DNA of 63,890 bases, filler included, from Octopus bimaculoides (taxonomy: Eukaryota), in the NCBI RefSeq assembly GCF_001194135.2. It is 5 parts of 5 records of this genome, joined end to end, with 100 filler letters (N's around TTAATTAATTAA, not from the genome) between each part and the next. Parts side by side here need not be neighbours in the genome. Positions count along the whole stretch, not along the records: positions 1 to 21,648 come from NC_069004.1; 4 more parts are not named here. The stretch is one strand, 5' to 3'. The number at the start of each line of letters is the position of its first letter. Position 1 is the first letter of the stretch. Made by a program: the position numbers and the translations under genes. Positions 1,768-21,648 of this stretch are shown in pieces. The notes below the pieces were generated by a model. That model searched no databases. It was not told the origin of the DNA and saw only the letters and a program-made list of their open reading frames with translations.

Positions 1768-1770
<3 letters not shown>

Positions 1771-2230: not shown

Positions 2231-2262
<32 letters not shown>

Positions 2263-3544: not shown

Positions 3545-3760
3545 CATTTAGGTGATGGGTTGGCAGGATCGTTAGCATGCCTGACAAAAAAATGTTACTA
3601 AGTATTTTGTCTGTCTTCACGTTCTGGGTTCAAATTCTGCTGGGGTTGTCTTAGCCTTTCATCCTTTTGGAGACAACAAAATAAGTACCAGTTGAGTACA
3701 AGGGTTGATGTAAACAACTAGACCCGACCCAACAAAATTTCAGGCCCTGTGCTTATAGTA
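3545..3760 (+). mobile_element. SINE family A (diverged)
   Basis: TTGGCAGGATCGTTAGC...GGGTTCAAATTC...CATCCTTTTGG...AAGTACCAGTTG followed by an (ATC)n tail. Confidence 0.75.
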
Positions 3761-3821
3761 GAAAGGATTATTATCATCATCATCATCATCATCATTAAGG
3801 CAGCAAGCTGACACAATGTTG

Positions 3822-4195
3822 TTGGCACTGTCGCTTATGACGTCGAGGGTTCCAGTTGAGCCGATCAACGGAACAGCCTGCTTGTGAAATTAACGTGCAA
3901 GTGGCTGAGCACTCCACAGACACGTGTACCCTTAACGTAGTTCTCGGGGATATTCATCGTGACACTGTGTGACAAGGCTGGACCTTTGAATTACGGGTAC
4001 AACAGAAACAGGAAGAGTGAGAGAAAGTTGTGGTGAAAGAGTACAGCAGCGTTCGCCACCATCCCCTGCTGGAGCCTTGCGGAGCTTTAGGTGTTTTCGC
4101 TCAATAAACACTCACAACGCCCGGTCTGGGAATTGAAACCGCGATCCTATGACTGCGAGTCCACTACCCTAACCACTGGGCCATTGCGCCTCCAC
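3822..4195 (-). mobile_element. tRNA-derived SINE (family C), near full length
   Basis: Minus-strand tRNA-like head (GGCGCAATGGCCCAGTGGTTAGGGTAG...GGTTTCAATTCCC); body shared with 57667-57995 and 7170-7320. Confidence 0.8.
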
Positions 4196-4554
4196 ATGAC
4201 ACAATGTCTAGTGCAGTGTTTCTCAGCTTTTTTTTATCCTTGTGTAACTCTTAAAATAAATTACATCTCAAAGAACCCTTGCACAAAAAAAAAATTATAT
4301 ACCATATCTTTCTTATATTTTGTTCAACGTTGTTCACATGGTAAATATATATAGGTTGCTATATACTTTTGATAACATAATAGGTTTAGATAGGACGAGG
4401 TCTGTATTACAATAACCAGTAATATGTTGTGCATGTATAGTGATATTAGGATCATGTAATTAGCATTAGTTTAATTCACACTTTCTTGCGGAACCCCAAA
4501 AAACGTTTTGCAGACCCCTAGGGCACCAGGGAACCCAGGTTGAGAAACGTAAGT

Positions 4555-5170
4555 CTACAGTGTTGAATGAAATGCTTAGCAACATTTCTTCTGGCCTTAC
4601 ATTCCAAGTTCAAATCCTGCCTAGGTCAACTTTTGCTTTTTGAGGTTGATAAAATATCAGCTGATTGGTGTAACTGACTCAGTCCTTCCCCTAAAATTTA
4701 GGCTTTGTACCTGTAGTAGAAAGGATTATTATTATTATTACCATCATCATCATTAAGGTGGTGACCTAGCAGAATTGTTAGCATACTGGACAAAATGCTT
4801 AGCGGTATTCTGTCCGTCACTACATTCCGAGTTCAAAACCCACCGAGGTCGACTATGCCTTTCATCTTCTCGGGGTCAATAAAATACCAGTTGAACACTG
4901 AGATCAATGTAATCAACTCATCCCCACCTCCCCTTCCAGCAAAAATATGAAATACTAATTATCATTATTATTATTAAGGCACCAAGTTGGCAGAATTGTC
5001 ACCATGCCAAAGCACACATTCCGAGTTCAAATTCTGCTCAAAGAGGTCGGTTTTGCGTTTCATCCGTTCAGGGTTGATAAAATAAGTACCAGTTGAATAC
5101 TGGGGTCAATGTAATTGATTTAACCTCTTCTAATATTATCCCCCACCCTCTGCCAAAATTTGAAATCATT
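4555..5170 (+). mobile_element. Three tandem diverged family A SINE copies
   Basis: GTTCAAA...TTTCATC...AAATA(A/C)C(A)AG core recurs three times, separated by (TTA/ATC)n tails. Confidence 0.7.
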
Positions 5171-5499
5171 ATTTTGCAGAATCAGGTTTTTAATTCTGAA
5201 CTGGAATCAATTCATCTTTTAAATGTAAAATTTTAAAAATTTGATGACATCAAAGGCTTCACAAATTGTCATTTCTGACAATGAAAGTTAGATCAGAAAT
5301 TTCCAATTTGCAGTAAATATCATTGTGCTAAAAGAAAGGTAATTTCTGATGGCACAGTCCTCATTAAAATTGATAATTTAATGAGTTTTCTGTTTTATCA
5401 ACCCTTTGATGTTTTGAATGGATAAATTTTTATTTTATATTTCATTTATTTTACTATTTCCTCTTTTTTGGTGATATTTCATATTATATATATAAAAAT

Positions 5500-5838
5500 T
5501 TTCAAATTTTACAGCTCATTAGAACTAACATTATTTTAACATTTTTTCATAACGATGTTTCTCACAGAAATATACATTACCTACACGTTTTGTATAAAAT
5601 TTGAAAATAATAACCCCCAAAATTTGAAGAAACTTAGTAAAATAATTTGAATACTAATGAGTTAACGAGAATTATTCTGTCAAAAGTAATACATAATCTC
5701 GAGACTTTTATGTGTTAGCTATTTATTTTTAGAATGACATTGTAGGGCTGGTGAGAAAGGCTAGATCCGGACAATTTGAACATAAAACAAGTTGATATTT
5801 TTGGCCGGATTTGGCTGCATTAAATGCAAAAGGGTTAA
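5500..5838. mobile_element. Possible non-autonomous piggyBac-type right end
   Basis: Ends ...TAAATGCAAAAGGG-TTAA (5821-5838), the usual piggyBac terminus plus TTAA site; no matching left end found. Confidence 0.35.
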
Positions 5839-6204
5839 AGATGTTGCTTGGAACATAAAACTAAAGCATTTTATTTGTTTGGAGTTATGATGCCACATTT
5901 TTCTATCTAAATATCATTATTTCAAAATGAGAGAACTTAGGACGAAATACTAATAAGTTATGTAAACTAAAATTGTGAAGCATGTGTAATAACAGGCTAA
6001 TCAGATATGAGATAATTCAAAGTAAATAAGTCTGAAAAGGGCTTTTGTGTGTTCCCAGAGAATATTACCCTCAGCGGTGCTAGTGTTGGTATATTCGTGA
6101 ATAAGTCACTAACCGAAATAAGTTGATCTATTGTTTAGGAAAATACTATTTACTTATTTAAGGGTTTGTACTGGATAAATTGCTAAAACAACTAACACAC
6201 TCTT

Positions 6205-6409
6205 TTACTTGTTTCAGTCATTTGACTGTGGCCATGCTGGAGCACCGCCTTTAGTCGAGCAAATCGACCCCAGGACTTATTAGTTGTAAGCCTAGTACTT
6301 ATTCTACCGGTCTCTTTTGCCGAACCGCTAAATTATGGGGACATAAACACACCAGCATTGGTTGTCAAGCGATGTTGAGAGGACAAACACACACACACAC
6401 ACACACACA
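6205..6409 (-). mobile_element. SINE family B 3' half, running into a gap
   Basis: TTGTTTCAGTCATTTGACTGTGGCCATGCTGGAGCACCGCCTTTAGTCG is the reverse complement of the family B tail. Confidence 0.85.
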
Positions 6410-6819
6410 NNNNNNNNNNNNNNNNNNNNNNNNNNNNNNNNNNNNNNNNNNNNNNNNNNNNNNNNNNNNNNNNNNNNNNNNNNNNNNNNNNNNNNNNNNN
6501 NNNNNNNNNNNNNNNNNNNNNNNNNNNNNNNNNNNNNNNNNNNNNNNNNNNNNNNNNNNNNNNNNNNNNNNNNNNNNNNNNNNNNNNNNNNNNNNNNNNN
6601 NNNNNNNNNNNNNNNNNNNNNNNNNNNNNNNNNNNNNNNNNNNNNNNNNNNNNNNNNNNNNNNNNNNNNNNNNNNNNNNNNNNNNNNNNNNNNNNNNNNN
6701 NNNNNNNNNNNNNNNNNNNNNNNNNNNNNNNNNNNNNNNNNNNNNNNNNNNNNNNNNNNNNNNNNNNNNNNNNNNNNNNNNNNNNNNNNNNNNNNNNNNN
6801 NNNNNNNNNNNNNNNNNNA

Positions 6820-6975
6820 TATATATATAAGGATCCCTTCCAGGGGCCCTATTATCGACTTTTTCAACAATCTAAGTATGCCATGAGGTTTCCAGACATG
6901 TGTTCTACTCATGTGTCAAGTCTCAAAATTGATAAAACGATGTAGGAGGAGGAGCTAGCTAACAACCCTACAAAC
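6820..6975. repeat. Interspersed repeat, inverted copy of ~59195-59355
   Basis: TATATAAGGATCCCTTCCAGGGGCCCTATTATCGA... is the reverse complement of TCGATAATAGGGCCCCTGGAAGGGATCCTTATATA at ~59321-59355. Confidence 0.8.
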
Positions 6976-9900
6976 AGAATTTCCCACATATGTAGTAGAT
7001 TCTTTTTAAAGTCTGGTACTTATATGACGGGTCTGGCTAAGTGGTTAGAATATTCGGTTTACAATCGTACAGTTGGGAGTTAGAATCCTGGCAAGTTGTG
7101 TCTGAGCAAGATGCTTTATTTCATGTTGTTCTAGTCTACTCATCTGGAAAAAATTGAGTTGTACCAGGAATTCAAAAAGGGCCAGCCATGTCATATTCTG
7201 TGTCACACTGTATGCTCCTGAGAACTATGTCAAGTGGAGTACTCAGCCACTTGTATGTTAATTTCACAAGTAGGCTATTCCGTTGATCAGATCAACGGGA
7301 ACACTCATCATGACCAACGGAGTACAAGTCCAATAATTATTCTATCAGTGTCTTTTGGCCAAACTGCTAAGTTATGGGATATAAACAAACCAATACTGGT
7401 GGTCAAGCAATCAACGTGGGGGTGGGGGCAGGAACAAACACGAGCAATGGGCCTCAGCACAGTTTCCATCTACCAAATTTATTGACAAGGCTTTGGTCAG
7501 CCCAAGGCTATGGTAGATGAGCTTGCCCAATGTGTCATGCAGTGGTACTGAACCCGAGACCACAAGCTTCTTAACCATACAAACCAGTCCTGTGTCTCAG
7601 GTGAGGAATTTTCAAATATGATTGTATCCGACAGGGCAGAAATGTTATTTTGAGTACCCCACAACAGATAAGGAAACAGGAAAACCAGCCAAATCACTCT
7701 CAGACTGCACTTTATATTATTACTTTTAAAAATGAAGCTTTTCACCACAAAATCTGCCTGGAAACAGATGGTGGGGTTAACAAGGGTATATTATTGGGGT
7801 AGAGTTTTGTTGGTTCAAACATATGCTTGTTTGTCCTAAGTGAATATGGAAATGGAAATGTTAGAACAATTGATAAGGGCGTTTGCAAAATAAATCCAAA
7901 ATTAGAAAGAAAAACAAAAACACTATTTTGTGGATTAAAATTTATTTGAAAATAAAATGCAAAATCCATGTGGAAAAAAAAATTAATAAAAATATCCATA
8001 TCACAGCAAAAAATACATTTATTTATAACAATTAACATCAACTGCAAAGCCAGGTTTACAATTTCACATAAGTAATAATATTTGAAAGAAAACACCTAGA
8101 CTGACAGATTATTTCTGCAGTTATCACATGTGCTTCAGCATGGCCACAGTCAAAAGACAAACAAGTAAAAATAGTAAAATAATCTCTTTCTAGGTGTGCT
8201 TAAAATTAAAATCAAGGGGGATAACTAATTTTAAAGGTGCAAAAGTTTTGTAAAATTATGCAGATGGGAACAGCTCTGGACTTTGAAGCCATTTTGGATT
8301 ACAATAAAGTGAATTTACGTGAGTTGGCAAGACAAAGATTGTGTGTGTGCGTGTATGCATTTTATTTATATATATTTATATAAGGGCATTACTACACAAT
8401 AATGCCTCACGCTAAGAGGGACTCCAAAAGTCAAAACTACCATAAGCACATTTGTACCGATCGCGAGGGAATGCAACCAATGGTTTCATAATCAATGCAG
8501 TAATCTGCATCTTTTATTCATCAGTACACGTATGGTCAAAACATTTTTACAGATATATATATATATATATATATATATCTGTAAAATTATGTGACACTTA
8601 TTCGGAAGCCATGATAAAACTCCGAGTTTCGGATGCCGGGGTGGGAGCCCACGCCAACATCTCTTCCGTTATCCGGCCATTGAAAATTCCTGTGAAAAAT
8701 GACTGTTAAAGGGAAATTACTGTGTGGTGACAAAAGAGCTAATAGACCACTAAGTAAGGTAAGGGTAAGGGAGTAGAGAAGCCTATAGGTTCGCGTAAGC
8801 GCACCAATCCGTCCATCCGCCTATATCTATATACTAAAACTACCCTCGCTTTAAACACATGCTCACCCACATACTCGCCAGTTTTTTGGAAACATTTAAT
8901 GAATATTGTCTGATTAAAAAATATACTAAAATAACGATTCCCACATCCAGCAAATTATATAGAAAGACCTTTAAAAAATTATTTATAAATTACAAACACT
9001 AGGAAAGTATATGAAAGCATATACAAATGTATAAAAATATCACATATAAGTATAAAAAATTCCTAAAACATTGTGTTCAAAATAAAATGGATTATGTTAT
9101 AAATTAAATTGGTATATTGAAAAGAATTCTTAGATAAGTTATTACGATACCATAGAAAAAATAAAAATACCTTTGGAAATGGGTTAATAAAATATTTCTA
9201 AAATATATCAGACACCGATCTAGGTAGAATAATAAAAGTTCTGGGGAGTATACCTTATACTTAGGGGAGATGCAAGATTTAGTAACCCACTGTAAATTTA
9301 TGTCATACTAACTGTAATGAAAGAGAACCTCAATACCGAAGGGGGCACGTTATGTATTATTGAAAGATTAGGGATCAAGGCAGTGATTCCATCCCAGTTT
9401 TTTGAAATTACTTTTTAAAGTCCAGCGGGGTGCTTCTGTCGAATTGGTATGAGCCCAAATTGAAGAACGGGATCACATGGTGCGATGCTAGCAGCAAGGG
9501 CCTGGGAACAGGAAGTGCAGCGGGTGCACCTGCACCCCCTAGAATTTTCAGGGGGGTGCAAGATCAAAATTCGCACCCCCTACATAATCTTAACAGTTTC
9601 AGAAAAAAGTGTCTAAAATTTATCTAAAATGTATAAAATTCTTAAGTTTGATCTTGTTTCAAATCAAAAAAAAAAGTGATGAAGCTGGCATAAAATTCCC
9701 TAGGGAGTTTATGACCACTAACTTCTGAAGGAGAGTACTGTCAAAATACAAAAAAAAAAAAAAAAAANNNNNNNNNNNNNNNNNNNNNNNNNNNNNNNNN
9801 NNNNNNNNNNNNNNNNNNNNNNNNNNNNNNNNNNNNNNNNNNNNNNNNNNNNNNNNNNNNNNNNNNNNNNNNNNNNNNNNNNNNNNNNNNNNNNNNNNNN

Positions 9901-10490
9901 NNNNNNNNNNNNNNNNNNNNNNNNNNNNNNNNNNNNNNNNNNNNNNNNNNNNNNNNNNNNNNNNNNNNNNNNNNNNNNNNNNNNNNNNNNNNNNNNNNNN
10001 NNNNNNNNNNNNNNNNNNNNNNNNNNNNNNNNNNNNNNNNNNNNNNNNNNNNNNNNNNNNNNNNNNNNNNNNNNNNNNNNNNNNNNNNNNNNNNNNNNNN
10101 NNNNNNNNNNNNNNNNNNNNNNNNNNNNNNNNNNNNNNNNNNNNNNNNNNNNNNNNNNNNNNNNNNNNNNNNNNNNNNNNNNNNNNNNNNNNNNNNNNNN
10201 NNNNNNNNNNNNNNNNNNNNNNNNNNNNNNNNNNNNNNNNNNNNNNNNNNNNNNNNNNNNNNNNNNNNNNNNNNNNNNNNNNNNNNNNNNNNNNNNNNNN
10301 NNNNNNNNNNNNNNNNNNNNNNNNNNNNNNNNNNNNNNNNNNNNNNNNNNNNNNNNNNNNNNNNNNNNNNNNNNNNNNNNNNNNNNNNNNNNNNNNNNNN
10401 NNNNNNNNNNNNNNNNNNNNNNNNNNNNNNNNNNNNNNNNNNNNNNNNNNNNNNNNNNNNNNNNNNNNNNNNNNNNNNNNNNNNNNNNNA

Positions 10491-11830
10491 CCTTTTAGTG
10501 TTCACACCGGCCGTAACCGGCCAAAATTAATTCCCCTTTATTTGTTCAAACCGGCCGTATCCGATAGCTCTACGAAATCGCTAAAAAAATAAACAAATCA
10601 CGTTATTGAATACTCGTAGCTTTGAGATAATGCAAGATGAAGCCTTTCCCGCCTGTATTCAAGTATAAATACTGTGAAATTGTTTAGACCACATGGTTTT
10701 TTTCAACGTTTGAAGAGGAGAGTTTACCTTGGTTGTGAAAGAAATGGTGTCAGCAAGTAGTGATTCCGATTTTGAAGGATTTACGATTGATGATATTGAA
10801 AATATCAACGAAAACAAAAGTATTTTGTCTTTGGATGAATCTGATATCGATATTAGTGATTTTTCGTTGGACGAGGAAGATTTTAATAACGAAAGTGATG
10901 AAAAATGATAGCGTAAACATAGCAACATGGTCAAAAATCACAACACCAAACACTATTTCTGATTTTACAGAAAACACTGGTCCACAACATAATTTACCTC
11001 CCGCTCAACCATTAGACTATCTGTTTTTATGAAAATGTTGCGAAGGAAACTAACAAATATGCACAACATTTAATTACTGTTCGTGAAAGAAACGATCCAC
11101 TATGGCAGCCAACTAATAAGGCGGAAATGAGAGTGCTTTTCACAATCAATATTATGTTTGGTGTGAAACAGCTTCCTCGACTGTGGAACTATTGGAGTCC
11201 CAATGTAAGGTATGACGATCCATATATTTTGAGTATAATGTCGAAAACGAGGTATTTGAAAATATCTCAGTATTTATATTTGGCTGATTCTGCTAATGCC
11301 CCCAACAAAAACGACCCAAACTACGATCCCCTGCTCAAAGTACGTCCTGTAATTAATTTACTTGTAAATAATTATAAAACTGTTTATCTACCTGGGAAAA
11401 ATCTCAGTGTAGATGAAGCCATGATAGGCATTAAAGGCAGAGTACATTTTCGGCAGTACATGCCTGCCAAACCTACTAAATGGGGGATCAAGGGATAGGA
11501 AGTTTGTGAATCGGATGTTTACACAGGGAAAAGCCCGCATGGATTGAGACATGATGTAGTGTGGTCCCTTACTGAACCATTTTACCATCATCACCGACAA
11601 CTCTATTTCGACGGGGTTTTTTTTTCGTCAGTGGCTTTGGCAGAAAATCTTGCCCGTGTAAGTACTCACATGTGCAGTACTGTATGGGAAACCGTAAAGG
11701 TTTACCCCGTAAAATGGAAATAAAATTAAAAAATAGAGGGGACATTTTACAGATGCAAAAAGAAGGTCTACTAATTATTGCTTATAAAGACAAAAGACAG
11801 ATTTTATTTCTGTCTTCTAACGAACAACGG
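10491..11830 (+). mobile_element. piggyBac (PGBD-like) transposon remnant, frameshifted transposase
   Basis: Terminus-like CCTTTTAGTGTTCACACCGGCC next to the gap; acidic N-terminus from ATG 10744; LSVDEAMIGIKGRVHFRQYMPAKPTKWGIK; LYFDxxF; NRKGLP; YKDKRQILFLSS. Confidence 0.9.
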
Positions 11831-11919
11831 AAGAGGATGTGGTGGAGTACCTAACAGAAGGGTATCATACCGTCCACAAAAAAGTGTGCAAATGGGCACT
11901 TAATGAAGAAAAAAATCCT

Positions 11920-12660
11920 CGAGTAATCGTATTATGTGGCGGTGTACTGCCAGAGGTTGCCGCATGAAAGTGTCTATCAGAAAGGAGACATGGCTGGAAG
12001 GTAGGACATTTCCTCTGCGGACTGTAATCATAAGGAACTGACCACAGTCCATTATTGTGTAGACGAACTGGGGATGAGCCCCAATACAGCTGTTGATTAT
12101 AACAGTTTTGTGCGAGAAGTATGCGCACATGACTTGCTCATGAACCCAGTTCAAACAGGTGGTCCTGGGAAGATTGTCGAGCTAGACGAGACAGTCTTCT
12201 CTAGGAGAAAAGTATAATTGAGGAAGGTTGCTACCTTAGCAATGGGTATTCGGAGGAGAGTGTTGCGAGACCAGACAAGTGTTTCTATATGCAGTTCCTT
12301 GTTGGAATCACGAAACACTTGAAGAATGTATCTGCCACTCCGTCCACCCAGGTACCACAATATTTAGTGACCTGTGGATGGCGTATTCTCATATTCCGGA
12401 GATCGAGGGGTACAGCTTTCAACATAGAACGGTGAACCACAAGTGTCGAGTTTTTTAACTCGGTAGATAACACGCACACGCAACAAATTGAAAGCACTTG
12501 GGCATCTTTAAAACCGGTTAACAAGCGACGGTGTGGTATACAACGTTCCATGATAGACTCATAGCTCTGTGAATTTATGTGACGGCGGAGATATGAGAAA
12601 ACTGACCGCTTGGAGAAATTGTTTGAAACCGTTCGTAATTTTGACCCCTCGTAAGTTCAA
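11920..12660 (+). pseudogene. Merlin (IS1595/IS1016-like) DDE transposase remnant 1
   Basis: Manual + strand translation: GGPGKIVELDETVF, WVFGG, PGTTIFSDLWMAY, TVNH, HTQQIESTW, EF(M); several stops and frameshifts. The ORF track shows only antisense ORFs here. Confidence 0.85.
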
Positions 12661-12829
12661 ATGCCTAACTCTAGGCATAAGCCTGAAATTTTGGAGGAGG
12701 GGATAGTCAATTGCATCGATGAAAGACTTGTATCCCTGCGAATATATGTGGCGGTGGAGATACGAGAAAACTGGCCGCTTGGGGAAATTGTTTGAAAGCA
12801 TTTGGAATTGTGACCCCTCATAAGTTCAA

Positions 12830-12935
12830 AACAACATGGCGCAGATTGTTCAAAGCCGACATAGCAGTAATAAACAGAAAATGGAAAAACATCGAGAGAG
12901 AGGCTGCCAATAGAGATCAGTGGAGATTGTTGTCT
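12830..12935 (+). mobile_element. RTE-type LINE 3' end fragment
   Basis: TTWRRLFKADIAVINRKWKNIEREAANRDQWR resembles the RTE ORF C-terminus. Confidence 0.55.
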
Positions 12936-12939
12936 GCCA

Positions 12940-13500
12940 GACGCAGAATTGGAAACCACACTTTGGACCTTGTCCTCCAAGAAATTAGTTCTAAGGTTAC
13001 CTTTGTAGCTGATGCACTGAACTTTGTTCATCAATGCACCATTCTTGTAAAAGAGTCACCAAAAAGAAAAGCACAATGGACAAATCTTTGTGGTGAGAAT
13101 GTCATCATGTTGCAAGCAGTGTGTCCAACTTGGTGGTGCATTAGAGCAACAGCACTGAAACGAGCAGAAAACAATTATCATACGAATGAGTAATTGTATG
13201 CATATCATGTTTCTTGCTTGACCTTCTTAATGACTCGTCGTTAAGAGCAACAACAAAGGCTACTGTTAAAGGGCTGCTAAAACAATCTGACAAAGCTTCC
13301 ACTTTGTTCGGCATTAAAATCGCTGGGGATATATTTGGAGTATGGGAGCCAGTGGCACGTAGCTTACAGCGTCCAGGCACAACAGCCGGTGATTGCTTGA
13401 AATTGATTGAAAAGTTGAAAAACTCTCTTTCCAGAAGTGAGGTTTTTGAAAAGTATTTCGATGAAGTATCCTCTTCTGACTTGGTGAAAATGCCCAACAT
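12940..13500 (+). pseudogene. hAT transposase central fragment (ZMYM1-like)
   Basis: HTLDLVLQE (HxLNL motif), LQAVCPTWWCIR (LCxTRWxxR motif), EPVARSLQ, FEKYFDEV. Confidence 0.75.
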
Positions 13501-13878
13501 TTTACAAATGTATCGGTATTTATATATTTTTTTTTGTTTGCCTTCTCGACTGATCGATTTTGGCGCGCATTGTCTCAAAGCATCGTGAGCCAATATGCAA
13601 TACAACCAATCGGCACCTGTGAATGAATCATGTGAGACAATCAAAGGCGATCTTTCGATACCAATCCTCAACGGCCACATGCAGGCACAATTTGTTAGTC
13701 CGAATTTGGATGCTGAGAAGTTTGGATCGAATACTCTGAAATACACAGACACAGACGAAGTTTGAAGTAAATCTTTAGTTTTATTTTCATTTTGCACACA
13801 CATACACAGACACAGAAACATCTGGCAACAAACTCCTGTATATTGTCACACATTTCATAAAACACATTCGATCCCACT

Positions 13879-14700
13879 ATGGCTGCTGGACGATATAAGT
13901 TTGTTGAATCTGTCCTTTCTGTTGATGACCTGTCTCAAAGACGTTACAAACTGCGAGACATTATCAACATAGCGAATAGCGCAGATTCAACAAACCAATA
14001 CCTAGCATCTGTAGGATTAATCTGAAAAAGCGCAATACAGTATCTGATGGGAAATTGTGGGGGTGTAGTGTTTGCAAACGAACTCGTAGCATTAGGTGAG
14101 ATTTGTTTTTCACAGATTGGGCAGCATTTGAAATCAAACAGAGTGCTGTGATGGAGGAACTTGAAATTGGGTCAGAAGCAATTGTAAACTGGTAAAATTA
14201 CTTCCGAGATATATGTGCTCAGTGGTGCATCGACAATCTTGTGGAAATTGATGAATCGAAATTCATGCACCGAAAATACCACCGTGGCCGTTATCGAGAA
14301 GGGCACTGGGTTCTTGGGATGGTTGAGCGGAGGAGTCTGAGATGTGTCTTAGTTCCTGTTGAAAACAGAAGTGCGGCAACATTGTTGCCTATCATCGCCA
14401 AACATGTTGTACCAGGAACTAAGATCATCACAGATTGCTGGAGGGCATATAACAGCCTGCAAAACCATTCCACTATCAACCACAGAGACACCTTCGTTGA
14501 TCCCAACGCTGCTACAATCCACACAAATACTGTGGAAGGGATGTGGATTGTAGCATTAAAGCAAAGTATCGGACGATGCATGGAACATCCGATAGGTTGT
14601 CTGAAACTTGAATGAATTTTGTTGGCGACGTTACCACAAGGATAATACTTTTGTGAACTTCATAAAGTGTATCAGACGCTATTATCATGGTACTTAAAAA
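13879..14700 (+). pseudogene. Merlin (IS1595-like) transposase remnant 2
   Basis: ORF 14241-14615: VEIDESKF..RKYHRGR..EGHWVLGMVER, NRSAATLLPII, PGTKIITDCWRAYN, NH..TFVDP, HTNTVEGMW; continues LNEF.WRR. Confidence 0.9.
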
Positions 14701-14959
14701 ATATATTTTATGAAGTTCATAAAATGTTTTCCATTAATTTAGCCTCAAATTCATGGGAATCTATATAATTTTATATTTATGATTTTTATTATAATTTTTT
14801 TTTTTTAAATCTTAGTAATTTGCATTTGTGTCTTTTCCCTCTTTCTTTATGGAAATTGCTGAATTGATTTGACGTAAAGAGAACTTGTATCAAAAGTATG
14901 CCTTTTTTTCTATAGTGGAGGTCATGAAAAATGAATTGACTTGCTGGTTTCAGCAACGG

Positions 14960-15382
14960 GGAATGCATTAATGCTGTGAGTGAGAGGAGTTGCTGTTATC
15001 AGCAGACAATTGTGGAGTATTTAACTTTGAAAATGCACATCTACCTGCTTCTTTCGATTTGCTCTTACTGTCATCGCAAATCAAACTTCTTGCTGGCCTA
15101 TGGACGGAAAGGGATAAATTGCCTAAATCATTTAGTGACATAGTTGAAGAATGGAGAGCGTCCGATGCCATTTATCATTCTAGTATGTCACAAGTGTTGG
15201 TGTTAATGCAGCTTGTCTTGTCTTCACTTGTATTTGTTGCATCAAGCGAAAGAACATTCAGCGCACTTCGCCATTTGAAGACCTGGCTCCGTACCACTAT
15301 GACACAGCACCGTCTTACACATTGTGCCATAATGCATGTACATAAAAAATATACGATGAAAACACTTTGCACATCCTCATGA
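14960..15382 (+). pseudogene. hAT transposase C-terminal dimerisation domain
   Basis: ASSERTFSALRHLKTWLRTTMTQHRL, the canonical hAT dimerisation motif. Confidence 0.85.
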
Positions 15383-15574
15383 AACGTTTCATTAGGAAAA
15401 CTTTTGGAATATGTTGATACAGTTTTTTTTATATACGTGTGAATTATGGAGTGATGCAAAAACTCGGCTTACTTCCATTTTAACACTTCTTATAGCTTCA
15501 TTATGTCTTTCTTGGTAAACTGACATTTGAATGTTCAGAGAAAACTTTAAAAGTAACTATTAGTGACTTCTCTC

Positions 15575-16640
15575 GAAGATTAACAAAATTTGGCATCGTG
15601 CTGTTATCAAGTACCTGTAGAAAAAGGATTTAGTCCCCAAGGACATGATATATTGGAGGATGATGCTCCAGTTTCATCAAGTCTAAAAGTGATTTGAGCA
15701 GAGATAATTTTGAGAAGACAAATGATCTGAACAGTCTGAAACTGTCTCCACTGGAGAGAAAAAAAATAAGTTGCCAGTGTTATTAGCATATCACGTGTGA
15801 GAGCTGAGAATATTCTACATAATAAATTTGGCACAACAAAAGTTTCTGCTTGGTGGGTGTTGCCTCTTCTGACACCTGATTAAAAGGGCACCAGGCTGAT
15901 CACATTTGGAGAATGTCTGACATTACTTGAGGCAAATCCAGTTTCCTTAAATGTGTTGGGTTCATCATTTTGAGTTAGAGAATAAGAGAAAATCTAACTG
16001 TGGAGACACACCAAGCGTTAAACTAATACATCCTTTTGTTGTTTACACCACCTGTCCTCGTCTGTTGTTGTTTTTTTCGTAAATTCCCCCATATATAATA
16101 CACGCTCACGTGGTCGCACCAGCTAATCCTGTCCCCACTCATCAAACACAAACTTTTGGATTCTACCTTCTTTCATTCTGGATTTTTTCTTTCTGGACTG
16201 TTTTATTCTGAACTCTACACTGGACCCATCTTCTGATTGGAAATCGCTTCCTTAAATGTGTTGGGTTCATCATTTTGAGTGAGAGAATAGGAGAAAATCT
16301 AACAGTGGAGACACACCTCAATACTTACTCTAAAGAAGGTCAGCAAGATCGTTTAATCTGCAGGGAAGGTGATGGCCTCAGTATTTTGGATTGCAAAAAG
16401 CATCGTGTTTATTGACAACTTTCAAAAGGCTCTCAGCATCAATGGAGAGTGCTGTACTGTGCCACCTTTCTAAGGCAGTTGCGAAAGGCTATCAAGGCCA
16501 AACGCAAGGAAAACTGTTGAGTATGTTTTTCTTTCATCAAAACAAATACTGCAGTGCACAAGTACTTCTTTTGAATGAATGCAAACAATTTCTCCAAGCG
16601 GTCAATTTTCTCAAAAATCTCAAAATTAGAAGAAAGTAAT
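15575..16640 (+). pseudogene. mariner transposase remnant, interrupted at 16013-16247
   Basis: Manual translation: IWHRAVIKYL, NILHNK..TKVSAWWV..LLTPD (WVPxxL motif), WVHHFE, AGKVMASVFWIAKSI (GKVMASVFWD motif). Confidence 0.8.
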
Positions 16641-16859
16641 GATGATCTCTTACCTATATTATACGTTAACGAATTCTTAATTGAGGGTGGATGATTACTA
16701 TTAGCATTAATATGTCTAATGTCTTCATTAATTTTATGGAATGCATCTAAATAATTAACATTATAGTTTTCATTATATATAGTAATCGTTAATCCATTTC
16801 GTTTAAAAAAAACTATATAGTTTCTTCTTACTCAAAGCAGGATATAAAGAAAAAGTCAG

Positions 16860-17420
16860 ATATATTAATTCTGTTAGGGGAGACCCAAAGATGAACCGAA
16901 TCCTCCAAACGTACATCATCATAAAAAATTAAATGGCAACCAAAATCCTTAAAGTTTTTAACCCAGGCTAAACTGCACCCAATAACAACCACAAAATCAA
17001 GTCAAAATGTGTGGAAAGGTCAACTGCAGGATCTGTGTCAACTTATTAGAAGGTTTGGAATACACATTAGAACATGGCCATCATTTTACCATCAGAACAA
17101 ACTTCACCTGTGCATCGGAAAAACTTAATTTACGTGATAACACGTGCAGGGTGCAATGGGCAATATATTGGCCATACAAAAAAACAGCCTACGAGAAAAG
17201 ATGGCAGAACATAAATCAAGAATTAACAATCCTGAAAACAGGAAAATACCTGTCAGCGGCCACATAGACAGATGTGCATCAAATAAAACTCCAAAATTTA
17301 CAGCTTTCCCACTTTACCAATTCAATAACAACGCAACCTTCATTTAAAGTCATAACAAAGAAATTCATTTCATTAGAAAATTCGGACCAAGTTTAAACAC
17401 CCTGGGCCAGGAATATTAAA
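16860..17420 (+). pseudogene. Penelope-like element 3' end, GIY-YIG endonuclease remnant
   Basis: CGKVNCRIC, TNFTCAS, LREKMAEHKSRI, PVSGHI..C, EIHFIRKF..LN follow the PLE GIY-YIG layout; frameshifted. Confidence 0.75.
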
Positions 17421-17606
17421 ACCAAAAAATTCTACAACTCCAACCGCCACTCATTACCATACCATGGTCACTGCTACTGCTTACTCAATGCACAAGACAG
17501 CCATTATGTCCCCACACATAAAACGCTACCAGGTGGACTCTGTTGAAACTAGTAAGATATAGTTATGAACTTTTCTTTTATTACACTTAACTTTTTAAAA
17601 ATATAT

Positions 17607-17654
17607 ATTTTTGATAAGGTTTGTTTCTTCAAGAAGAACCGAAACATGTAAAAT
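17607..17654 (+). ncRNA. Degenerate minimal type I hammerhead-like motif
   Basis: ATTT-TTGATAA-GGTT..AACC-GAAA-CATGTA-AAAT; core mutated (C3U, G8A); palindromic ACATGT in the helix III position. Confidence 0.4.
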
Positions 17655-17784
17655 CTCTCAGAAAATTAGAATTTATCTTATACAGTGGCGTCTTCAAACT
17701 TCTTTTTTTATTCCACAATGTAACCTTGTGCATATCGTTGGCGAGTTTTTCTTCCTCCGTCTTCCCTTCTTTGGACTTTCCTAT

Positions 17785-17819
17785 ATTTCCGATGAAGAGC
17801 TCCGTTTGAAACGTCAAAT
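17785..17819 (+). ncRNA. Minimal type I hammerhead-like motif in PLE terminal repeat
   Basis: ATTT-CCGATGA-A-GAGC-TCC-GTTT-GAAA-CGTC-AAAT; 4-bp helix I, palindromic ACGT, U4C variant. Confidence 0.6.
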
Positions 17820-18009
17820 TCTCTTTCTTTCCTTTCCTGAGCATCCAGTAAAACAATATCTGTATCACTCACGCTCACACGGATCCCGGCCTTTCGACTG
17901 AAGTTGGAGTACCCAATTCCTGGAATTCTTGTGCCTTTGGGTTACTGTTCCTGTTGGATGACGCCATTCCTGCACCTTGATTACATAATGAGCCACAAAA
18001 CCACAGCAA

Positions 18010-18717
18010 TAATAATGAATTCACCAAAGGAATCTTCAAGACCCAGAACACTCCTCCACCAAACAGCCACTTGGAAGCATTTGAAAACGAAGTATGGGAC
18101 ACCATCAAAAATACTGGATTCAAGCGACACCCACTCAGGAACAATAGTTACCAAAATTACCTTAAAGACCTCCTGCACAAGCTAAAATCCCAGAACGGAA
18201 TTATTGTTCACTTGGACAAAACAAGAAATTCTTATACTATGGATATTAACTTATACCACCAACTGCTACACAAAGAAATTACAAAAAAATATTAAATAGC
18301 ACCTTACGATCCATGAACTTAACCGCCAAGGACATCATGTTAGACTACAGCTTAGGTGAAAAAACAGAGCCATTTGTACCACTTAGACGTAGAATCACAC
18401 TAAAAGACCATAAACCGAACTTCCTAACAGACACTCAAGTTAGATTAACATGCCCAAATAGATCAGACCTATGTAAATTAAGTAAGCAAATACTAGATAA
18501 ATACATCCCTAAGGTAAAAAGTAGACTCACCCTTGAATTATGGTCCAACACATACGAAGCCCTAAATTGGTTCTCCAAAATACCAAACACAAAAAAAACT
18601 ATAAATCCATACAGATAGGCATAGTAGATTAGTACTCCTCAATTAACCCCACGATCCCAAATAGTGCCCTAATATTCGACAAAAACCACTCACATCTAAC
18701 TATGAAAGAAATAAAAG
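18010..18717 (+). pseudogene. Penelope-like reverse transcriptase, N-terminal half
   Basis: LEAFENE, LDKTRNSY, ITLKDHKPNF, RLTCPNRSDLCKLSKQILD, WSNT.EALNWF, DIVD.YSSI; contains stops. Confidence 0.75.
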
Positions 18718-19169
18718 GGTGCACATTGGGATTAGACACTGATGGAAAACCACTGTAACTTCTACCTTTTCATTTTGTCGTTTTCACTTTTGATAATGTT
18801 TTCTACATATCACAGTCATGCGATTCCCCCTATAAAATTTTTTTGACCCCCCCACCCAAATTTCCCTTTCTCTATCAATTTGAAACGAAAAGACGGGATT
18901 GGTTTTACCAGTACCTCTTTCTTGACTTCTCTCTGTAAAGGGTTCGTCCTCTTTCTTGACCTCTTCACGCCACTATTGTTCACAATTGAATTCAAGTATT
19001 CATAGTAGCGTGTTGCGTAAATTTTTCAAACCCCATATACCCAAAATGTTTTCACTTCGTGTTGAATTATAGAAAAAGGTTACAGGATACATTTCTGGAT
19101 TTTTTGAAAGAAAACAAGTTAATTGCACAAAAAAAAAAAATCTATTTGTTGTCGTCAAATGAAAATTCA

Positions 19170-19912
19170 ATCTTTTCAACGTGCTATTGACGGAGTTATT
19201 TAGCAATGTAATTCATGCAGTAAAATGATCTCTATAAGAAAAAATACTTTTGTAGAGAAATGCCACTTGACAGCGTTTATATTATTTCAAGTAATAGCAG
19301 ACTTTATATTTGAATTGCCAGTAACCTGTTCCATGAGTTGAAACAATATTAGCAACGACACGGCCATTCAATGGTACGAATACTGCTGAGAAATATGTTC
19401 AGTCAAGTTACTGAAAGTTTAGAAAAAATTAGGTGGACTGAACCACACTGTACAAGTGGATGAAAGCCTGCTTTTCAAGAGGAAAAATGAGGTTGGCAGA
19501 ATGGTTGACAAGTTTTGGGTGATAGGCTTTTACAATGTGATTTAGAAAAAGGGCTATATGCAACAAATAACTGATAGAAAGGCTGAAACGTTAGAAGTTG
19601 CAATCATTGAAAATGTGGAGCCAGGAACTACGATTTTCACGGATATGTGGCCCAGTTACCAAAATCTTCAGAAACTGGGATACATTCATGGTACCATGAA
19701 CCATTCAAGGAATTTTGTTGATCCCGTTAGTGGGCTATGTACCAATAGCGTAGAGGCATTCTTGTCACGGATAAAACGTAGACTGAAATACGAAAGTGGA
19801 TCATGTGGTAACATGGAATGGTCACATATTGATGAGGCAATGCACCGTGATTATTACAATATGAAGTATAAGAATTTGCGGGAGAACTTTCAGACATTTA
19901 TCAAGCACACAG
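19170..19912 (+). pseudogene. Merlin (IS1595-like) transposase remnant 3
   Basis: LGGLNHTVQVDESLL..RK...GR, FWVIG, RKAETLE..I..NVEPGTTIFTDMWPSY, MNHSRNFVDP, CTNSVEAF. Confidence 0.9.
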
Positions 19913-20135
19913 CAATTAACCCCACGATCCTAAATAGTGCTCTAATAGTCGCCAAAAACCACTCGCATCTAACTATAAAAGAAATAAAAGTAATACTTGA
20001 AGGAAGGAAATCAGTGATAAGCTTTGATAACAAACTCTGGGTCCAGACGGACTCCCCAAACTGTTTTGATATCACTATGGGAGCCCCAGATTCAGCTCAG
20101 ATAACTGACTTAGTGGGCATATATTTACTTTCATA
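19913..20135 (+). pseudogene. Penelope-like RT continuation (palm region)
   Basis: FDITMGAPDSAQITDLVGIYLL resembles the PLE RT motif FDVTMGSxDGAExCELVG; first 78 bp duplicate 18640-18717. Confidence 0.75.
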
Positions 20136-20392
20136 CATGTGTCAACCATTAACAATAAAGTAGCCACTGAAGCCATTTATACAAATTTTAATTACGACCT
20201 CTTCGCAGCCACTCCTCCTTCCAGGCATCTGCATGGCGTGATACCTAAAGGGAAACGTCACGGAAGAACCACTTTAGTGGACGCCGATGCCAATGCCAAC
20301 AACATCTTGAAACACTTATCAGGGAAGTTTGTAAGCAAGTAATGCCATTGCTGCTGATATCACAGGTCTGGTTTTAAGAGTTATAAATAGCC

Positions 20393-21310
20393 TTGACGAA
20401 ACCAGCTAACATCAGATCCACCATGGAGACACCACTGAACGCAGCACACGAGCTAAAGAAGAAATTTGAAGAACCAGTGAGATCAGAAACTCTACAACTT
20501 TACACATGGGTGTACAGGTTCGAAACCGATGATGACTTCACATGGGACGAAACACCAGATATTCACACAGCAACCTCTACATTCAATTACCAACCAAATG
20601 CAGCGAAGAATTACTTAGTTAATCTACTCAACAAACACCCATTGATCGTATTTCATAAATCTTCCATAAGCAAAGTTAAACACTGCTACGATCGACCGCA
20701 CTTTCACATCATCTCATGGCATAAGGACCACCCAACAAATATACACAGCTTCCAAATGCTGAAAAACAGCATACAAAAACTGTATAACTTGCAAGCACAA
20801 AAAGTATTTACACAGCACAGATTCTGTAATTACTTAGCACAGGACCAAACGATCCGATGGGTCGTCGCTGCAAACCAAATAAACACCCCCGGACAAAAGA
20901 AATGTTCGAATCATTGACTTCAAAACCATTACAACAACCGGACGTAGACTCGGACAATGATTCAAAAACATCAGCCATCATGCCCACCAACACAGTGAGA
21001 GGGCACAAGTACGACTTCTTAAAAAAGATTATGAAAAAATGCAACAGCACAGACATAGGGGACCTCATTCGGTTCTGTAAAACCACGAACAGGGTCAAAT
21101 ATCAGAACGAGTGGAATAACATTTACCGTAACACACCTAATCTACAAACAATCATACAAGCAGCTGCAACTGAAACGAACATAGAAACACTCGCAACACC
21201 CATATAGGAACAGGTAAGAGAGAAAAAAGACTACTTAATAATATGGACGCATACGACTTCGCTAAGAAAACGTTCGAGGTATGCCACAAAATCAATCCCA
21301 AAGTTAACGG
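20393..21310 (+). pseudogene. Parvovirus/densovirus NS1-like endogenous viral element, frameshifted and truncated before Walker A
   Basis: HUH motif RPHFHIISW and downstream FCNYL in ORF 20393-20917; linker KYDFLKKIMKK...TPI in ORF 20857-21207; a third frame from ATG 21243 gives MDAYDFAKKTFEVCHKINPKVN, like the segment before the SF3 helicase Walker A in NS1. Confidence 0.65.
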
Positions 21311-21312
21311 AA

Positions 21313-21648
21313 GTGAGACAAGACCGCTTGAACACCATCGCCTATCGTAAAAGTCTTTGCAAAGGTGTCATGAAACCATGCAGTTCCAGATGGTTATTAC
21401 AGGCGTTCGGTTATAAGCCAAACATGGATTATTCATCCTACCCTGAAATCTCCATTTCCAACAAAGAAGATTCAAGCGAGAAACCTGCTCGGAAAGTAAA
21501 CCCGAGTGAAAGTGCCCCTACCACCATCAAAACGAAAAACCATGGAGGTGAAAGGGCCAAGAAAGAAGAATTGAAAGCAGGAAAAACCAATAAATCAAAA
21601 GATGAAACAGCCAAAGAAAGAAGCAGACCTGAATATCCATATAACAAA
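21313..21648 (+). other. Unassigned Lys/Glu-rich open frame cut by a gap
   Basis: Open for 112 codons up to the N-run; no family recognised. Confidence 0.3.

What the first reader, a model, noticed from the sequence alone, without database searches (positions are those of the whole stretch)
10491..21648. 11-kb single-strand archive of transposon and viral fragments with no SINEs: candidate piRNA-cluster-like locus or composite cargo element
Seen: about 11 independent remnants all read on the + strand. They are piggyBac, three Merlins, an RTE tail, a split hAT, a mariner, a PLE-type insert in the mariner, a PLE GIY-YIG, a PLE RT and an NS1-like fragment. If orientations were independent and unbiased, the chance is 2 x 0.5^11, about 0.001. 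Elsewhere in the window Tc1, RTE and PLE remnants occur on both strands. I find no SINE and no long microsatellite in the block, although these recur every 1-3 kb outside it and the fragments here are old (many stops). Established: uni-strand piRNA clusters such as Drosophila flamenco accumulate co-oriented TE fragments, and insect piRNA clusters accumulate EVEs. Inference: this is either a minus-strand-transcribed piRNA source or a multi-copy unit that assembled and moved as one piece.
Basis: partly seen in the sequence, partly recalled or inferred. Interest (0 to 1): 0.8.

Follow-up and report, generated by a model that had tools for sequence, protein, structure and literature searches.

The report
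Same-strand transposon graveyard in octopus DNA
An 11-kb stretch of an octopus-like genome is packed with broken transposon genes and one broken parvovirus-like gene that nearly all read on the same strand, but the bias is modest (about 9 to 1) and nothing here shows that it is a piRNA source or a mobile unit.

Summary
On the + strand of 10490-21648 I confirm a piggyBac, three separate Merlins, a hAT C-terminus, a mariner, a Penelope-like element (PLE) and a parvovirus NS1-like fragment. There are 8-9 independent remnants, not 11:
- The split hAT is one element.
- The GIY-YIG and RT pieces fit one Naiad-type PLE, split by a Merlin-bearing insert.
- Most of the 'RTE tail' is the duplicated C-terminal end of Merlin #1.
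- The 'PLE-type insert' in the mariner has no identity or orientation.

A 45-nt Merlin fragment lies on the minus strand. The two-sided binomial is 0.02-0.04, not 0.001, before allowing for how the region was picked. Both block borders are artificial: an assembly gap and the end of the piece.

The lack of SINEs and microsatellites is real and starts near 8.2 kb, before the gap. The host is an octopus or a close relative.

My best reading is a degenerate, SINE-poor nest of transposon insertions with local duplications, where the strand bias is chance or weak selection. A uni-strand piRNA cluster remains possible (about 0.2) but cannot be tested here. The limited evidence does not favour a composite mobile unit. 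The NS1-like gene and the reading frame upstream of it belong to an unannotated parvovirus-like family seen only in raw read-archive assemblies.

The parts
1..8170 (.). SINE- and microsatellite-rich left flank, given for context. It holds 19 SINE-like repeat intervals of several families, in both relative orientations, plus (TA)n, (GA)n, (AC)n and a 26-nt minisatellite.
   Evidence: Self-blastn, the repeat finder and Tandem Repeats Finder. No Pfam hit in its longest reading frames.
9768..10489 (.). Assembly gap of 722 N. The block begins at the first base after it. A(18) lies just before it, at 9750-9767.
10490..11890 (+). piggyBac-like transposase remnant. It has an acidic N-terminal region and DDE domain positions 14-285 of 349, and is cut off at the 3' side. 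There are 4 in-frame stops within the Pfam match.
   Evidence: Pfam DDE_Tnp_1_7, E 5e-42; stop count; sequence view.
11928..12830 (+). Merlin #1, an IS1595-type DDE transposase remnant. Its C-terminal coding end is tandemly duplicated (12547-12661 and 12716-12830, 83% identical). It has one frame change and stops.
   Evidence: Pfam DDE_Tnp_IS1595; tblastn with P0035.
12850..12945 (+). Short stretch whose translation resembles the conserved C-terminal tail of non-LTR (LINE) ORF2 proteins. Unverified.
   Evidence: By inspection of the translation only. No tool hit.
12960..13720 (+). Probable middle part of a hAT transposase, with a CPTWW motif. Not confirmed by any profile.
   Evidence: Translations. 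No Pfam or PDB hit.
14046..14579 (+). Merlin #2, lying between the two hAT parts and so read as a nested insertion. It has 2 in-frame stops.
   Evidence: Pfam DDE_Tnp_IS1595, E 5e-19 for the frame; tblastn with P0035 residues 42-233.
14990..15382 (+). hAT C-terminal part with the dimerisation domain.
   Evidence: Pfam Dimer_Tnp_hAT, E 1.4e-6, 28.4 bits against a cut-off of 21.4.
15579..16570 (+). mariner-type transposase remnant. It holds a 235-nt unidentified insert (16013-16247) flanked by 70-nt direct repeats (15943-16012 and 16248-16317, 96% identical).
   Evidence: Pfam Transposase_1, 25.1 bits against a cut-off of 24; repeats; sequence.
16571..16615 (-). Short copy of the Merlin #1 C-terminal unit in inverted orientation. 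It is the only minus-strand remnant found.
   Evidence: blastn, 88-97% identity; tblastn.
17007..20130 (+). Penelope-like retroelement remnant of the Naiad type (endonuclease first, then RT). The motifs run in the order CX4CX2C, IY-x10-YIG, CxC, GxK, DKT, then the RT motifs. It is interrupted by the insert at 18718-19903, truncated before the YxDD motif, and has several frame changes and stops. No hammerhead ribozyme.
   Evidence: Motif test, 0 of 1000 shuffles; homologues P0036 and P0037 by tblastn; Rfam negative; architecture as described in PMC8557442. No Pfam RT hit.
18718..19903 (+). Insert inside the PLE RT carrying Merlin #3, which is almost a full transposase in one frame with 5 in-frame stops. 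The insert is flanked by 87-nt direct repeats of RT sequence (18631-18717 and 19904-19990, 89-92% identical).
   Evidence: tblastn with P0035 residues 20-283 and with P0034 (84% identity; P0034 is a UniRef protein of Octopus bimaculoides); repeats.
20157..20339 (+). Last 61 codons of a conserved reading frame ('ORF-A') that lies upstream of the NS1-like gene in related contigs. The 5' part is missing.
   Evidence: tblastn with the upstream reading frame of L004, 46% identity, E 9e-14. The same gene order is seen in L013.
20396..21311 (+). Parvovirus NS1/Rep-like gene fragment: an HUH-type nuclease domain and linker up to the start of the helicase. It is broken by 2 frame changes and 1 in-frame stop and is cut off before the Walker A motif, so the helicase domain is missing.
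   Evidence: 27 homologues by exhaustive HMMER; tblastn; relative P0024 has Pfam Parvo_NS1, E 9e-10, and matches AAV Rep40/68 in PDB; AlphaFold model pLDDT 76, with Parvoviridae non-structural proteins as top viral fold matches, E 3e-3; stop count.
21312..21648 (.). Unassigned A-rich DNA running up to the end of the piece.
   Evidence: No Pfam hit. No continuation of NS1 or RT detected.

Best explanation
The block is a degenerate nest of transposon insertions in an octopus (or closely related) genome, not a single element. Autonomous copies of a piggyBac, three Merlins, a hAT, a mariner, a Naiad-type Penelope-like element and a parvovirus-like element inserted next to or into one another. Examples are Merlin #2 inside the hAT and Merlin #3 inside the PLE reverse transcriptase. 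They were then truncated and mutated.

The region also underwent local duplications and patch-like insertions: long direct repeats flank two inserts, a Merlin end is tandemly duplicated, and a short inverted copy of that end lies 4 kb away.

The region escaped the SINE insertions and the microsatellites that fill the neighbouring 8 kb. I infer, but have not shown, that this reflects local target or chromatin preference of the SINE machinery.

The shared strand of 8-9 of the 9-10 orientable remnants is real. I take it to be mainly chance, or weak orientation-dependent retention, because it is only nominally significant and the region was picked for this very property. No product or function of the block as a whole is shown.
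For: - Identities and strands of the remnants.
- The three Merlins are independent (about 45% amino-acid identity, same domain).
- Nesting: the hAT parts flank Merlin #2. RT residues 1-126 and 100-174 of P0037 lie on either side of the Merlin #3 insert.
- Truncation and decay: stop counts; no terminal inverted repeats for any remnant.
- Local duplications.
- One minus-strand fragment.
- Binomial 0.02-0.04.
- SINE and microsatellite contrast.
- Octopus origin: the best named hit is an Octopus bimaculoides protein, 84-86% identical.
- The NS1 unit exists by itself in other contigs.
Against: - About 8.5 of 11.2 kb is coding-region remnant of autonomous elements from at least 7 superfamilies. By general knowledge, that is denser than one expects of ordinary repeat-rich DNA, where non-autonomous copies usually dominate.
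- A 9:1 strand ratio is still unusual for one locus.
- The block contains a virus-derived fragment in the same orientation, as piRNA clusters of arthropods often do.
- The complete absence of SINEs next to a flank that is 32% SINE-like suggests a distinct chromatin or transcription state, which 'chance' does not explain.
- I could not compare the block with genome-wide statistics.
Confidence: 0.5

Rival explanations
1. The block is part of a uni-strand piRNA cluster. A long precursor would be transcribed from the minus strand, so the + strand transposon and virus remnants are antisense to it. Processing would give piRNAs that target sense transcripts of piggyBac, Merlin, hAT, mariner, PLE and the parvovirus-like element. 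Insertions in the productive orientation would be retained, and that would create the strand bias.
For: - Strand ratio of 8-9 to 1.
- Very high density of coding remnants from many superfamilies, and a co-oriented viral fragment.
- Different repeat content from the flank.
- Unidirectional piRNA clusters are typical of the slug D. laeve (PMC12506671).
- Mollusc clusters are enriched for transposons, including DNA transposons (PMC6128900).
- piRNA-sized RNAs with ping-pong and phasing are reported in O. bimaculoides (PMC12479628).
Against: - No small-RNA or transcript evidence at all.
- The prior is low: such clusters are few per genome (170 in the slug, 21 of them dominant).
- Mollusc clusters are reported to be enriched for young, low-divergence copies, whereas most remnants here are truncated with stops.
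- The bias is only nominally significant, and the locus was selected for it.
- The direction of any transcription is unknown.
Confidence: 0.22
2. The block lies in a long intron or other transcribed region of a minus-strand host gene. Remnants that are sense to the gene were removed by selection because they carry splice and polyadenylation signals, so mostly antisense (+ strand) copies remain.
For: Antisense bias of transposons within genes is established general knowledge. There is no host exon or Pfam domain in the piece that would argue against an intronic position. The strand bias is as above.
Against: - By general knowledge, intronic orientation bias is usually moderate and strongest for retroelements, whereas most remnants here are DNA transposons.
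- SINEs in the left flank lie in both orientations.
- No exon is seen, so nothing positively supports a gene.
Confidence: 0.1
3. The block, or part of it, is a multi-copy composite unit. The fragments would have been joined once, for instance by repair-associated template switching or capture by a larger element, and then copied as one piece. That would explain abutting truncated fragments in one orientation.
For: - Remnants abut without recognisable termini.
- Two inserts are flanked by 70-87-nt duplications, and a Merlin end is copied locally, which shows non-transpositional joining in this region.
Against: - No terminal repeats. The ends of the block cannot be seen.
- Relatives of the Merlin/RT fusion reading frame cover only one side of the junction.
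- The NS1 unit occurs with other neighbours elsewhere.
- None of the five reading frames of the window that I looked up is on record elsewhere.
- The data searched were sparse, so this is weak evidence.
Confidence: 0.07
4. Part of the arrangement is an assembly artefact. Repeats would have been joined wrongly, or falsely duplicated around gap-filled sequence, in a scaffold that carries N gaps.
For: There are two N gaps in the piece, and the block starts at one of them. The junctions are abrupt, and near-duplicate flanks surround two inserts.
Against: - The flanking duplicates are 89-96% identical rather than near-identical, as expected of real, aged duplications.
- Mis-assembly would not favour one strand.
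- Reading frames run across junctions. An example is the 201-codon Merlin/RT fusion frame.
Confidence: 0.05

Closest known systems
Uni-strand piRNA clusters (Drosophila flamenco; unidirectional clusters of gastropods such as Deroceras laeve and Arion vulgaris)
   Same: Dense, mixed, truncated transposon remnants with a strong bias to one strand. A virus-derived fragment sits among them.
   Different: No small-RNA, transcript, promoter or chromatin evidence. The content is dominated by old DNA-transposon remnants, not young copies or LTR elements. One fragment lies on the other strand. The extent of the locus is unknown because both borders are artificial.
Nested transposon insertion clusters ('graveyards') of repeat-rich animal and plant genomes
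   Same: Elements are inserted into elements (Merlin in hAT, Merlin in PLE), with truncation, stops, loss of termini and local duplications.
   Different: The strand ratio and the share of coding-region remnants are higher than such regions are generally expected to show, and the locally abundant SINEs are absent.
Endogenous parvoviral/densoviral elements (NS1-derived EVEs) of invertebrate genomes
   Same: An NS1/Rep-like gene with an HUH motif, broken by frame changes and a stop, truncated and embedded in host repeats. A relative carries the Parvo_NS1 SF3 helicase domain.
   Different: The N-terminal domain gets no Pfam or PDB sequence hit. All relatives are unnamed proteins from raw read-archive assemblies. 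A conserved upstream reading frame of unknown function accompanies the gene. No capsid gene is seen.
Naiad clade of Penelope-like elements (Craig et al. 2021, PMC8557442)
   Same: The endonuclease lies upstream of the RT on the same strand. It has a CX2-5CxxC finger before GIY-YIG, a CxC motif, a DKG-type motif, RT motifs and no hammerhead ribozyme. The clade is described from molluscs.
   Different: The DKG-type motif reads DKT here; the paper gives DKA for Naiads and DKT for the Hydra clade. No pseudo-LTR and no (TA)n target are seen. The RT gets no Pfam hit. Membership rests on motif order, not on a phylogeny.

Membership tests
Uni-strand piRNA cluster | Abundant 24-32-nt, 1U-biased small RNAs arising from one strand over many kb | not testable with these tools
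   No small-RNA data are available here. Public O. bimaculoides libraries exist (PMC12479628).
Uni-strand piRNA cluster | Transposon fragments mostly antisense to the cluster transcript | tested here: inconclusive
   8-9 remnants lie on + and 1 on -, two-sided p 0.02-0.04. The direction of transcription is unknown.
Uni-strand piRNA cluster | High density of diverse transposon fragments | tested here: met
   About 8.5 of 11.2 kb is assigned to remnants of at least 7 superfamilies.
Composite or cargo-carrying mobile element | Defined termini (terminal repeats) and a target-site duplication around the whole unit | tested here: inconclusive
   No terminal inverted repeats within the block. Both ends of the block are cut off, by the gap and by the end of the piece.
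Composite or cargo-carrying mobile element | Several genomic copies sharing the same internal junctions | tested here: not met
   Relatives of the junction-spanning reading frame match only one side of it. The window's own reading frames are not on record elsewhere. The source genome itself could not be searched, so the test is weak.
Parvoviridae NS1/Rep-derived endogenous viral element | HUH nuclease motifs in the N-terminal domain | tested here: met
   HFHIISWH and a downstream conserved Tyr motif align with 27 relatives. The fold search puts HUH Rep/origin-binding domains and Parvoviridae non-structural proteins on top, but weakly (E 0.12 in PDB, 3e-3 in the viral library).
Parvoviridae NS1/Rep-derived endogenous viral element | SF3 helicase domain (Pfam Parvo_NS1) | tested here: not met
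   The window copy stops just before Walker A and has no Pfam hit. The domain is present in relative P0024 (Pfam E 9e-10; AAV Rep40/68 E 0.003). Membership of the family is therefore inferred through that relative.
Parvoviridae NS1/Rep-derived endogenous viral element | Embedded in host DNA and disrupted | tested here: met
   It is flanked by the PLE/Merlin remnants and has 2 frame changes, 1 stop and a 3' truncation.
Penelope-like element, Naiad clade | GIY-YIG endonuclease with a CX2-5CxxC finger, lying N-terminal to the RT | tested here: met
   CX4CX2C at 17010-17036 and IY-x10-YIG at 17128-17172, upstream of the RT on the same strand. The pairing occurred in 0 of 1000 shuffles. Pfam GIY-YIG is not hit.
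Penelope-like element, Naiad clade | CxC motif, DKG-type motif and core RT motifs | tested here: inconclusive
   CxC, GxK, DKT and KDHK are found in the expected order. RT motifs are seen in homologue P0037 by inspection. There is no Pfam or PDB RT hit, and the structure model failed (pLDDT 33).
Penelope-like element, Naiad clade | No canonical hammerhead ribozyme | tested here: met
   No Rfam hit in the block at E up to 1.
Merlin (IS1595/IS1016-like) DNA transposon | DDE_Tnp_IS1595 transposase domain | tested here: met
   Three separate matches. One relative is annotated as an ISXO2-like transposase of Octopus bimaculoides.
Merlin (IS1595/IS1016-like) DNA transposon | Terminal inverted repeats with short target-site duplications | tested here: not met
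   None found around any of the three copies. The copies are truncated.
piggyBac, hAT and mariner DNA transposons | Family-specific transposase domains | tested here: met
   DDE_Tnp_1_7, E 5e-42. Dimer_Tnp_hAT, 28.4 bits. Transposase_1, 25.1 bits. The middle part of the hAT is not confirmed.
   The repeated unit is the C-terminal end of Merlin #1. Only about 100 nt reads like a generic LINE ORF2 tail by eye, with no tool support.

The most novel reading that the evidence does not exclude
The block is part of a uni-strand piRNA-producing locus of a cephalopod. It would archive DNA transposons, a Naiad-type PLE and a fragment of a so far undescribed parvovirus-like lineage, all antisense to a minus-strand precursor. 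That would be an EVE-bearing piRNA cluster outside arthropods.
Probability: 0.2. Interest if true: 0.6.

Novelty: new member of a known kind. Interest (0 to 1): 0.35.

Why it matters
If small RNAs do come from one strand of this block, it would be a concrete cephalopod locus for studying how molluscs record transposons and viruses. Cephalopods have not been described in this respect in the papers I could find.

Two by-products could be used by annotators of mollusc genomes, whatever the outcome:
- A family of parvovirus NS1-like genes with a conserved upstream reading frame. It has no named relatives and is so far visible only in raw read-archive assemblies.
- An example of a Naiad-type Penelope-like element in an octopus-like genome.

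If the small-RNA test is negative, the block is an ordinary repeat-rich region. It would then show that a run of co-oriented remnants at one locus is weak evidence on its own.

Tried and rejected
WHAT LED NOWHERE
- Pfam, PDB sequence search and the word-index protein search found nothing for the NS1-like reading frame. Only the exhaustive HMMER search found the family.
- The word-index search with the RT reading frame found nothing. RT relatives appeared only through the Merlin/RT fusion frame.
- Exact look-up of the window's own reading frames in public assemblies gave nothing on record, and P0034 was not on record either. I therefore could not fetch the source locus or other copies.
- A paper search for the read-archive run numbers gave no hit, so the organisms behind the related contigs are unknown.
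- Rfam found no hammerhead ribozyme and only AT-rich chance matches. ARAGORN found no tRNA-like sequence.
- A PDB profile search with the NS1 family alignment gave nothing.
- PDB searches with the hAT middle part, with P0037 and with the mariner frame gave nothing meaningful.
- The AlphaFold model of RT relative P0037 was too poor to use (pLDDT 33).
- I tested whether the RT resumes after the NS1-like fragment. It does not, above background.
- Scans of viral contigs for the NS1 family failed: the alignment was too diverse, and the single protein found no relative.

WHAT I CONSIDERED AND REJECTED
- Hydra-clade PLE in partial tandem, as opposed to Naiad. The DKT motif fits Hydra, but the CX2-5CxxC finger, the order endonuclease-then-RT and the lack of a ribozyme fit Naiad better. 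The clade remains open.
- A giant piggyBac carrying cargo. I rejected this because the piggyBac gene itself is cut off by Merlin #1.

Full report
SCOPE AND BORDERS
The piece is 21648 bases, with N runs at 6410-6818 and 9768-10489. The finding's start, 10491, is the first base after a 722-N assembly gap, and its end is the end of the piece. Neither border of the 'block' is therefore a biological boundary.

WHAT IS ON THE + STRAND
I translated all six frames with stops masked as X and scanned them against Pfam.
- On the + strand of 10491-20489 there were hits to piggyBac DDE_Tnp_1_7 (E 5e-42, 11025-11843), to the IS1595/Merlin DDE domain three times, to mariner Transposase_1 and to the hAT dimerisation domain.
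- In shorter context, the mariner hit (25.1 bits against a cut-off of 24) and the hAT hit (28.4 against 21.4) pass Pfam's own thresholds.
- No minus-strand frame of the block gave any hit, and neither did the + frames of 20190-21648.
- A full-length Merlin relative (P0035) places the three Merlins at about 12074-12437, 14046-14579 and 19123-19914. They cover the same part of the transposase and share only about 45% amino-acid identity, so they are independent copies.
- The best named relative of Merlin #3 is an 'ISXO2-like transposase domain-containing protein' of Octopus bimaculoides, 84-86% identical. This indicates an octopus or close relative as the source. The SINE-like repeats of the left flank also look octopus-like to me, but that is memory, not a test.

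THE NS1-LIKE FRAGMENT
The 174-codon reading frame at 20393-20917 had no Pfam, PDB or word-index hit. An exhaustive HMMER search found 27 relatives, with a best E of 3e-40. The ten I checked are unnamed proteins from short read-archive assemblies.
- One relative, P0024, continues into a domain that hits Pfam Parvo_NS1 (E 9e-10) and AAV Rep40/68 in the PDB (E 0.003).
- The family alignment shows the three-motif pattern of HUH nucleases, and the window copy keeps HFHIISWH.
- An AlphaFold model (pLDDT 76) has RepB origin-binding domains as its best PDB matches and Parvoviridae non-structural proteins as its best viral matches. Both are weak: E 0.12 and 3e-3.
- In the window the gene spans 20396-21311. 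It has two frame changes and one in-frame stop, and it ends just before the Walker A motif.
- Upstream, 20157-20339 encodes the last 61 residues of a reading frame that also precedes the NS1-like gene in two divergent sets of contigs from different sequencing projects.

The window therefore holds a fragment of a conserved two-gene parvovirus-like unit.

THE PENELOPE-LIKE PARTS
No Pfam RT or GIY-YIG hit was obtained. Three observations still support a PLE:
1. A CX4CX2C motif at 17010-17036 is followed by IY-x10-YIG at 17128-17172. This pairing occurred in none of 1000 shuffles of the block. The GIY-YIG pattern alone occurs in 15% of shuffles.
2. Downstream on the same strand come CxC, GxK, DKT and KDHK motifs.
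3. After these comes a gene with homologues P0036 and P0037 (E about 1e-20). By inspection, their sequences carry RT motif A (FDID) and motif C (YRDD).

Craig et al. (PMC8557442) describe exactly this order for the Naiad clade: an N-terminal GIY-YIG endonuclease with a CX2-5CxxC finger, then a CxC motif, a DKG-type motif and the RT. That clade lacks hammerhead ribozymes and occurs in molluscs. Rfam finds no ribozyme here. The clade is not settled, because DKT is the Hydra-clade variant in that paper.

NESTING AND LOCAL DUPLICATIONS
- P0037 residues 1-126 map to 18337-18713 and residues 100-174 map to 19906-20130. The RT is thus one gene split by a 1186-nt insert (18718-19903) that carries Merlin #3.
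- That insert is flanked by 87-nt direct repeats of RT sequence, 89-92% identical.
- The 201-codon reading frame at 19558-20163 is a chance fusion of the Merlin C-terminus with the resumed RT.
- The mariner shows the same pattern: a 235-nt unidentified insert flanked by 70-nt repeats, 96% identical.
- Merlin #2 lies between a probable hAT middle part and the confirmed hAT C-terminus, so the 'split hAT' is one element with a nested Merlin.
- The unit at 12547-12661, repeated at 12716-12830, is the in-frame C-terminal end of Merlin #1. It is not an RTE tail. Only about 100 nt (12850-12945) reads like a generic LINE ORF2 tail, and I could not test that.
- A 45-nt copy of the Merlin C-terminal unit lies inverted at 16571-16615, with 88-97% nucleotide identity. 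It is the one remnant on the minus strand.
- No terminal inverted repeats were found for any remnant.

HOW STRONG IS THE STRAND BIAS?
The orientable independent remnants are piggyBac, Merlin #1, hAT, Merlin #2, mariner, the PLE, Merlin #3 and the NS1 unit. The LINE-like tail is an unconfirmed ninth. All are on +, and one Merlin fragment is on -. This is before allowing for the fact that the locus was chosen because of the bias.

SINES AND MICROSATELLITES
- Self-comparison finds 19 SINE-like intervals (2630 nt, about a third of the sequence) in 1-8170, in both relative orientations. It finds none in 8171-21648, even with word size 7.
- Tandem Repeats Finder finds long (TA)n, (GA)n and (AC)n arrays and a minisatellite on the left, and only short low-scoring arrays in the block.
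- The contrast is real, but it starts about 1.6 kb before the gap.
- SINE tails and microsatellites probably go together, so I count this as one observation rather than two.

INTERPRETATION
The anatomy is that of a nest of insertions, later truncated and rearranged locally. It is not that of a single element. I cannot test the piRNA hypothesis.
- In its favour are the strand ratio, the density of coding remnants (about 8.5 of 11.2 kb), the co-oriented viral fragment and the distinct repeat content. Unidirectional piRNA clusters are typical in a slug (PMC12506671), and mollusc clusters are enriched for transposons, including DNA transposons (PMC6128900).
- Against it are the low prior (170 clusters per slug genome, 21 of them dominant), the reported enrichment of young copies in mollusc clusters as against the decayed remnants here, the modest statistics, and the absence of any expression evidence.
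- The 'moved as one piece' alternative has no support. No termini are seen. Junction-spanning relatives are absent. The NS1 unit stands alone elsewhere. The data available for this test were thin.

My estimates are:
- 0.5 for a non-functional insertion nest with a chance or weakly selected bias
- 0.22 for a uni-strand piRNA cluster
- 0.1 for orientation bias inside a minus-strand gene
- 0.07 for a composite multi-copy unit
- 0.05 for an assembly artefact

NOVELTY AND SCORE
Strand-biased transposon-rich loci and parvovirus-derived endogenous elements are both known kinds. The new items are a member of an unannotated NS1-like family with a conserved upstream reading frame, and a probable Naiad-type PLE in an octopus-like genome. 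Interest is moderate to low (0.35) unless small-RNA mapping turns out positive.

Noticed in passing
window 20157-21311; loci L001-L008 and L013-L016: The NS1-like gene and the reading frame upstream of it form a conserved two-gene unit in contigs from at least two sequencing projects (SRR118693xx; ERR1237032x and ERR14857104). The exhaustive search returned 27 cluster representatives, between 28% and 65% identical to the window copy. None of the ten clusters I looked up carries a name. In several contigs the NS1 gene is itself split into consecutive reading frames. It could be an undescribed parvovirus-like lineage, endogenous or exogenous.
   Followed up: partly
window 15943-16317 and 18631-19990: Two inserts are flanked by long imperfect direct duplications of the host element: 70 nt at 96% identity and 87 nt at 89-92%. 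That is far longer than transposase target-site duplications. It suggests repair-associated templated insertion or local duplication rather than clean transposition.
   Followed up: partly
window 13141-13821, minus strand: The longest reading frame of the block (226 codons, ATG start) lies antisense to the probable hAT middle part. It has no Pfam hit and is not on record in public assemblies. It is probably an antisense chance frame, but it is long for chance.
   Followed up: partly
window 19558-20163: An intact 201-codon reading frame is a fusion of the Merlin #3 C-terminus with the resumed PLE RT sequence. It would be mis-annotated as one protein.
   Followed up: yes
window 1-8170: Several SINE-like families occur in both orientations. 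Copies in 1-5123 are mostly in one relative orientation, and copies in 6201-8170 are mostly in the other. They are interleaved with (TA)n, (GA)n, (AC)n, (ATC)n and (ATT)n arrays.
   Followed up: partly
window 3107-3249: A 26-28-nt minisatellite (about 5 copies, 89% matches) lies in the GC-richer part of the left flank.
   Followed up: no
window 8171-9767: A SINE-free, A-rich stretch with no Pfam hit ends in A(18) at 9750-9767, right at the assembly gap. It may be the 3' end of a + strand retroelement. If so, the same-strand, SINE-free zone would extend to the left of the gap.
   Followed up: no
method: The word-index protein search returned nothing for the NS1-like reading frame. Yet the exhaustive search found a relative (P0002) that shares exact runs of 9-13 residues with it. 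A negative result from the word-index tool was not reliable in this case.
   Followed up: no
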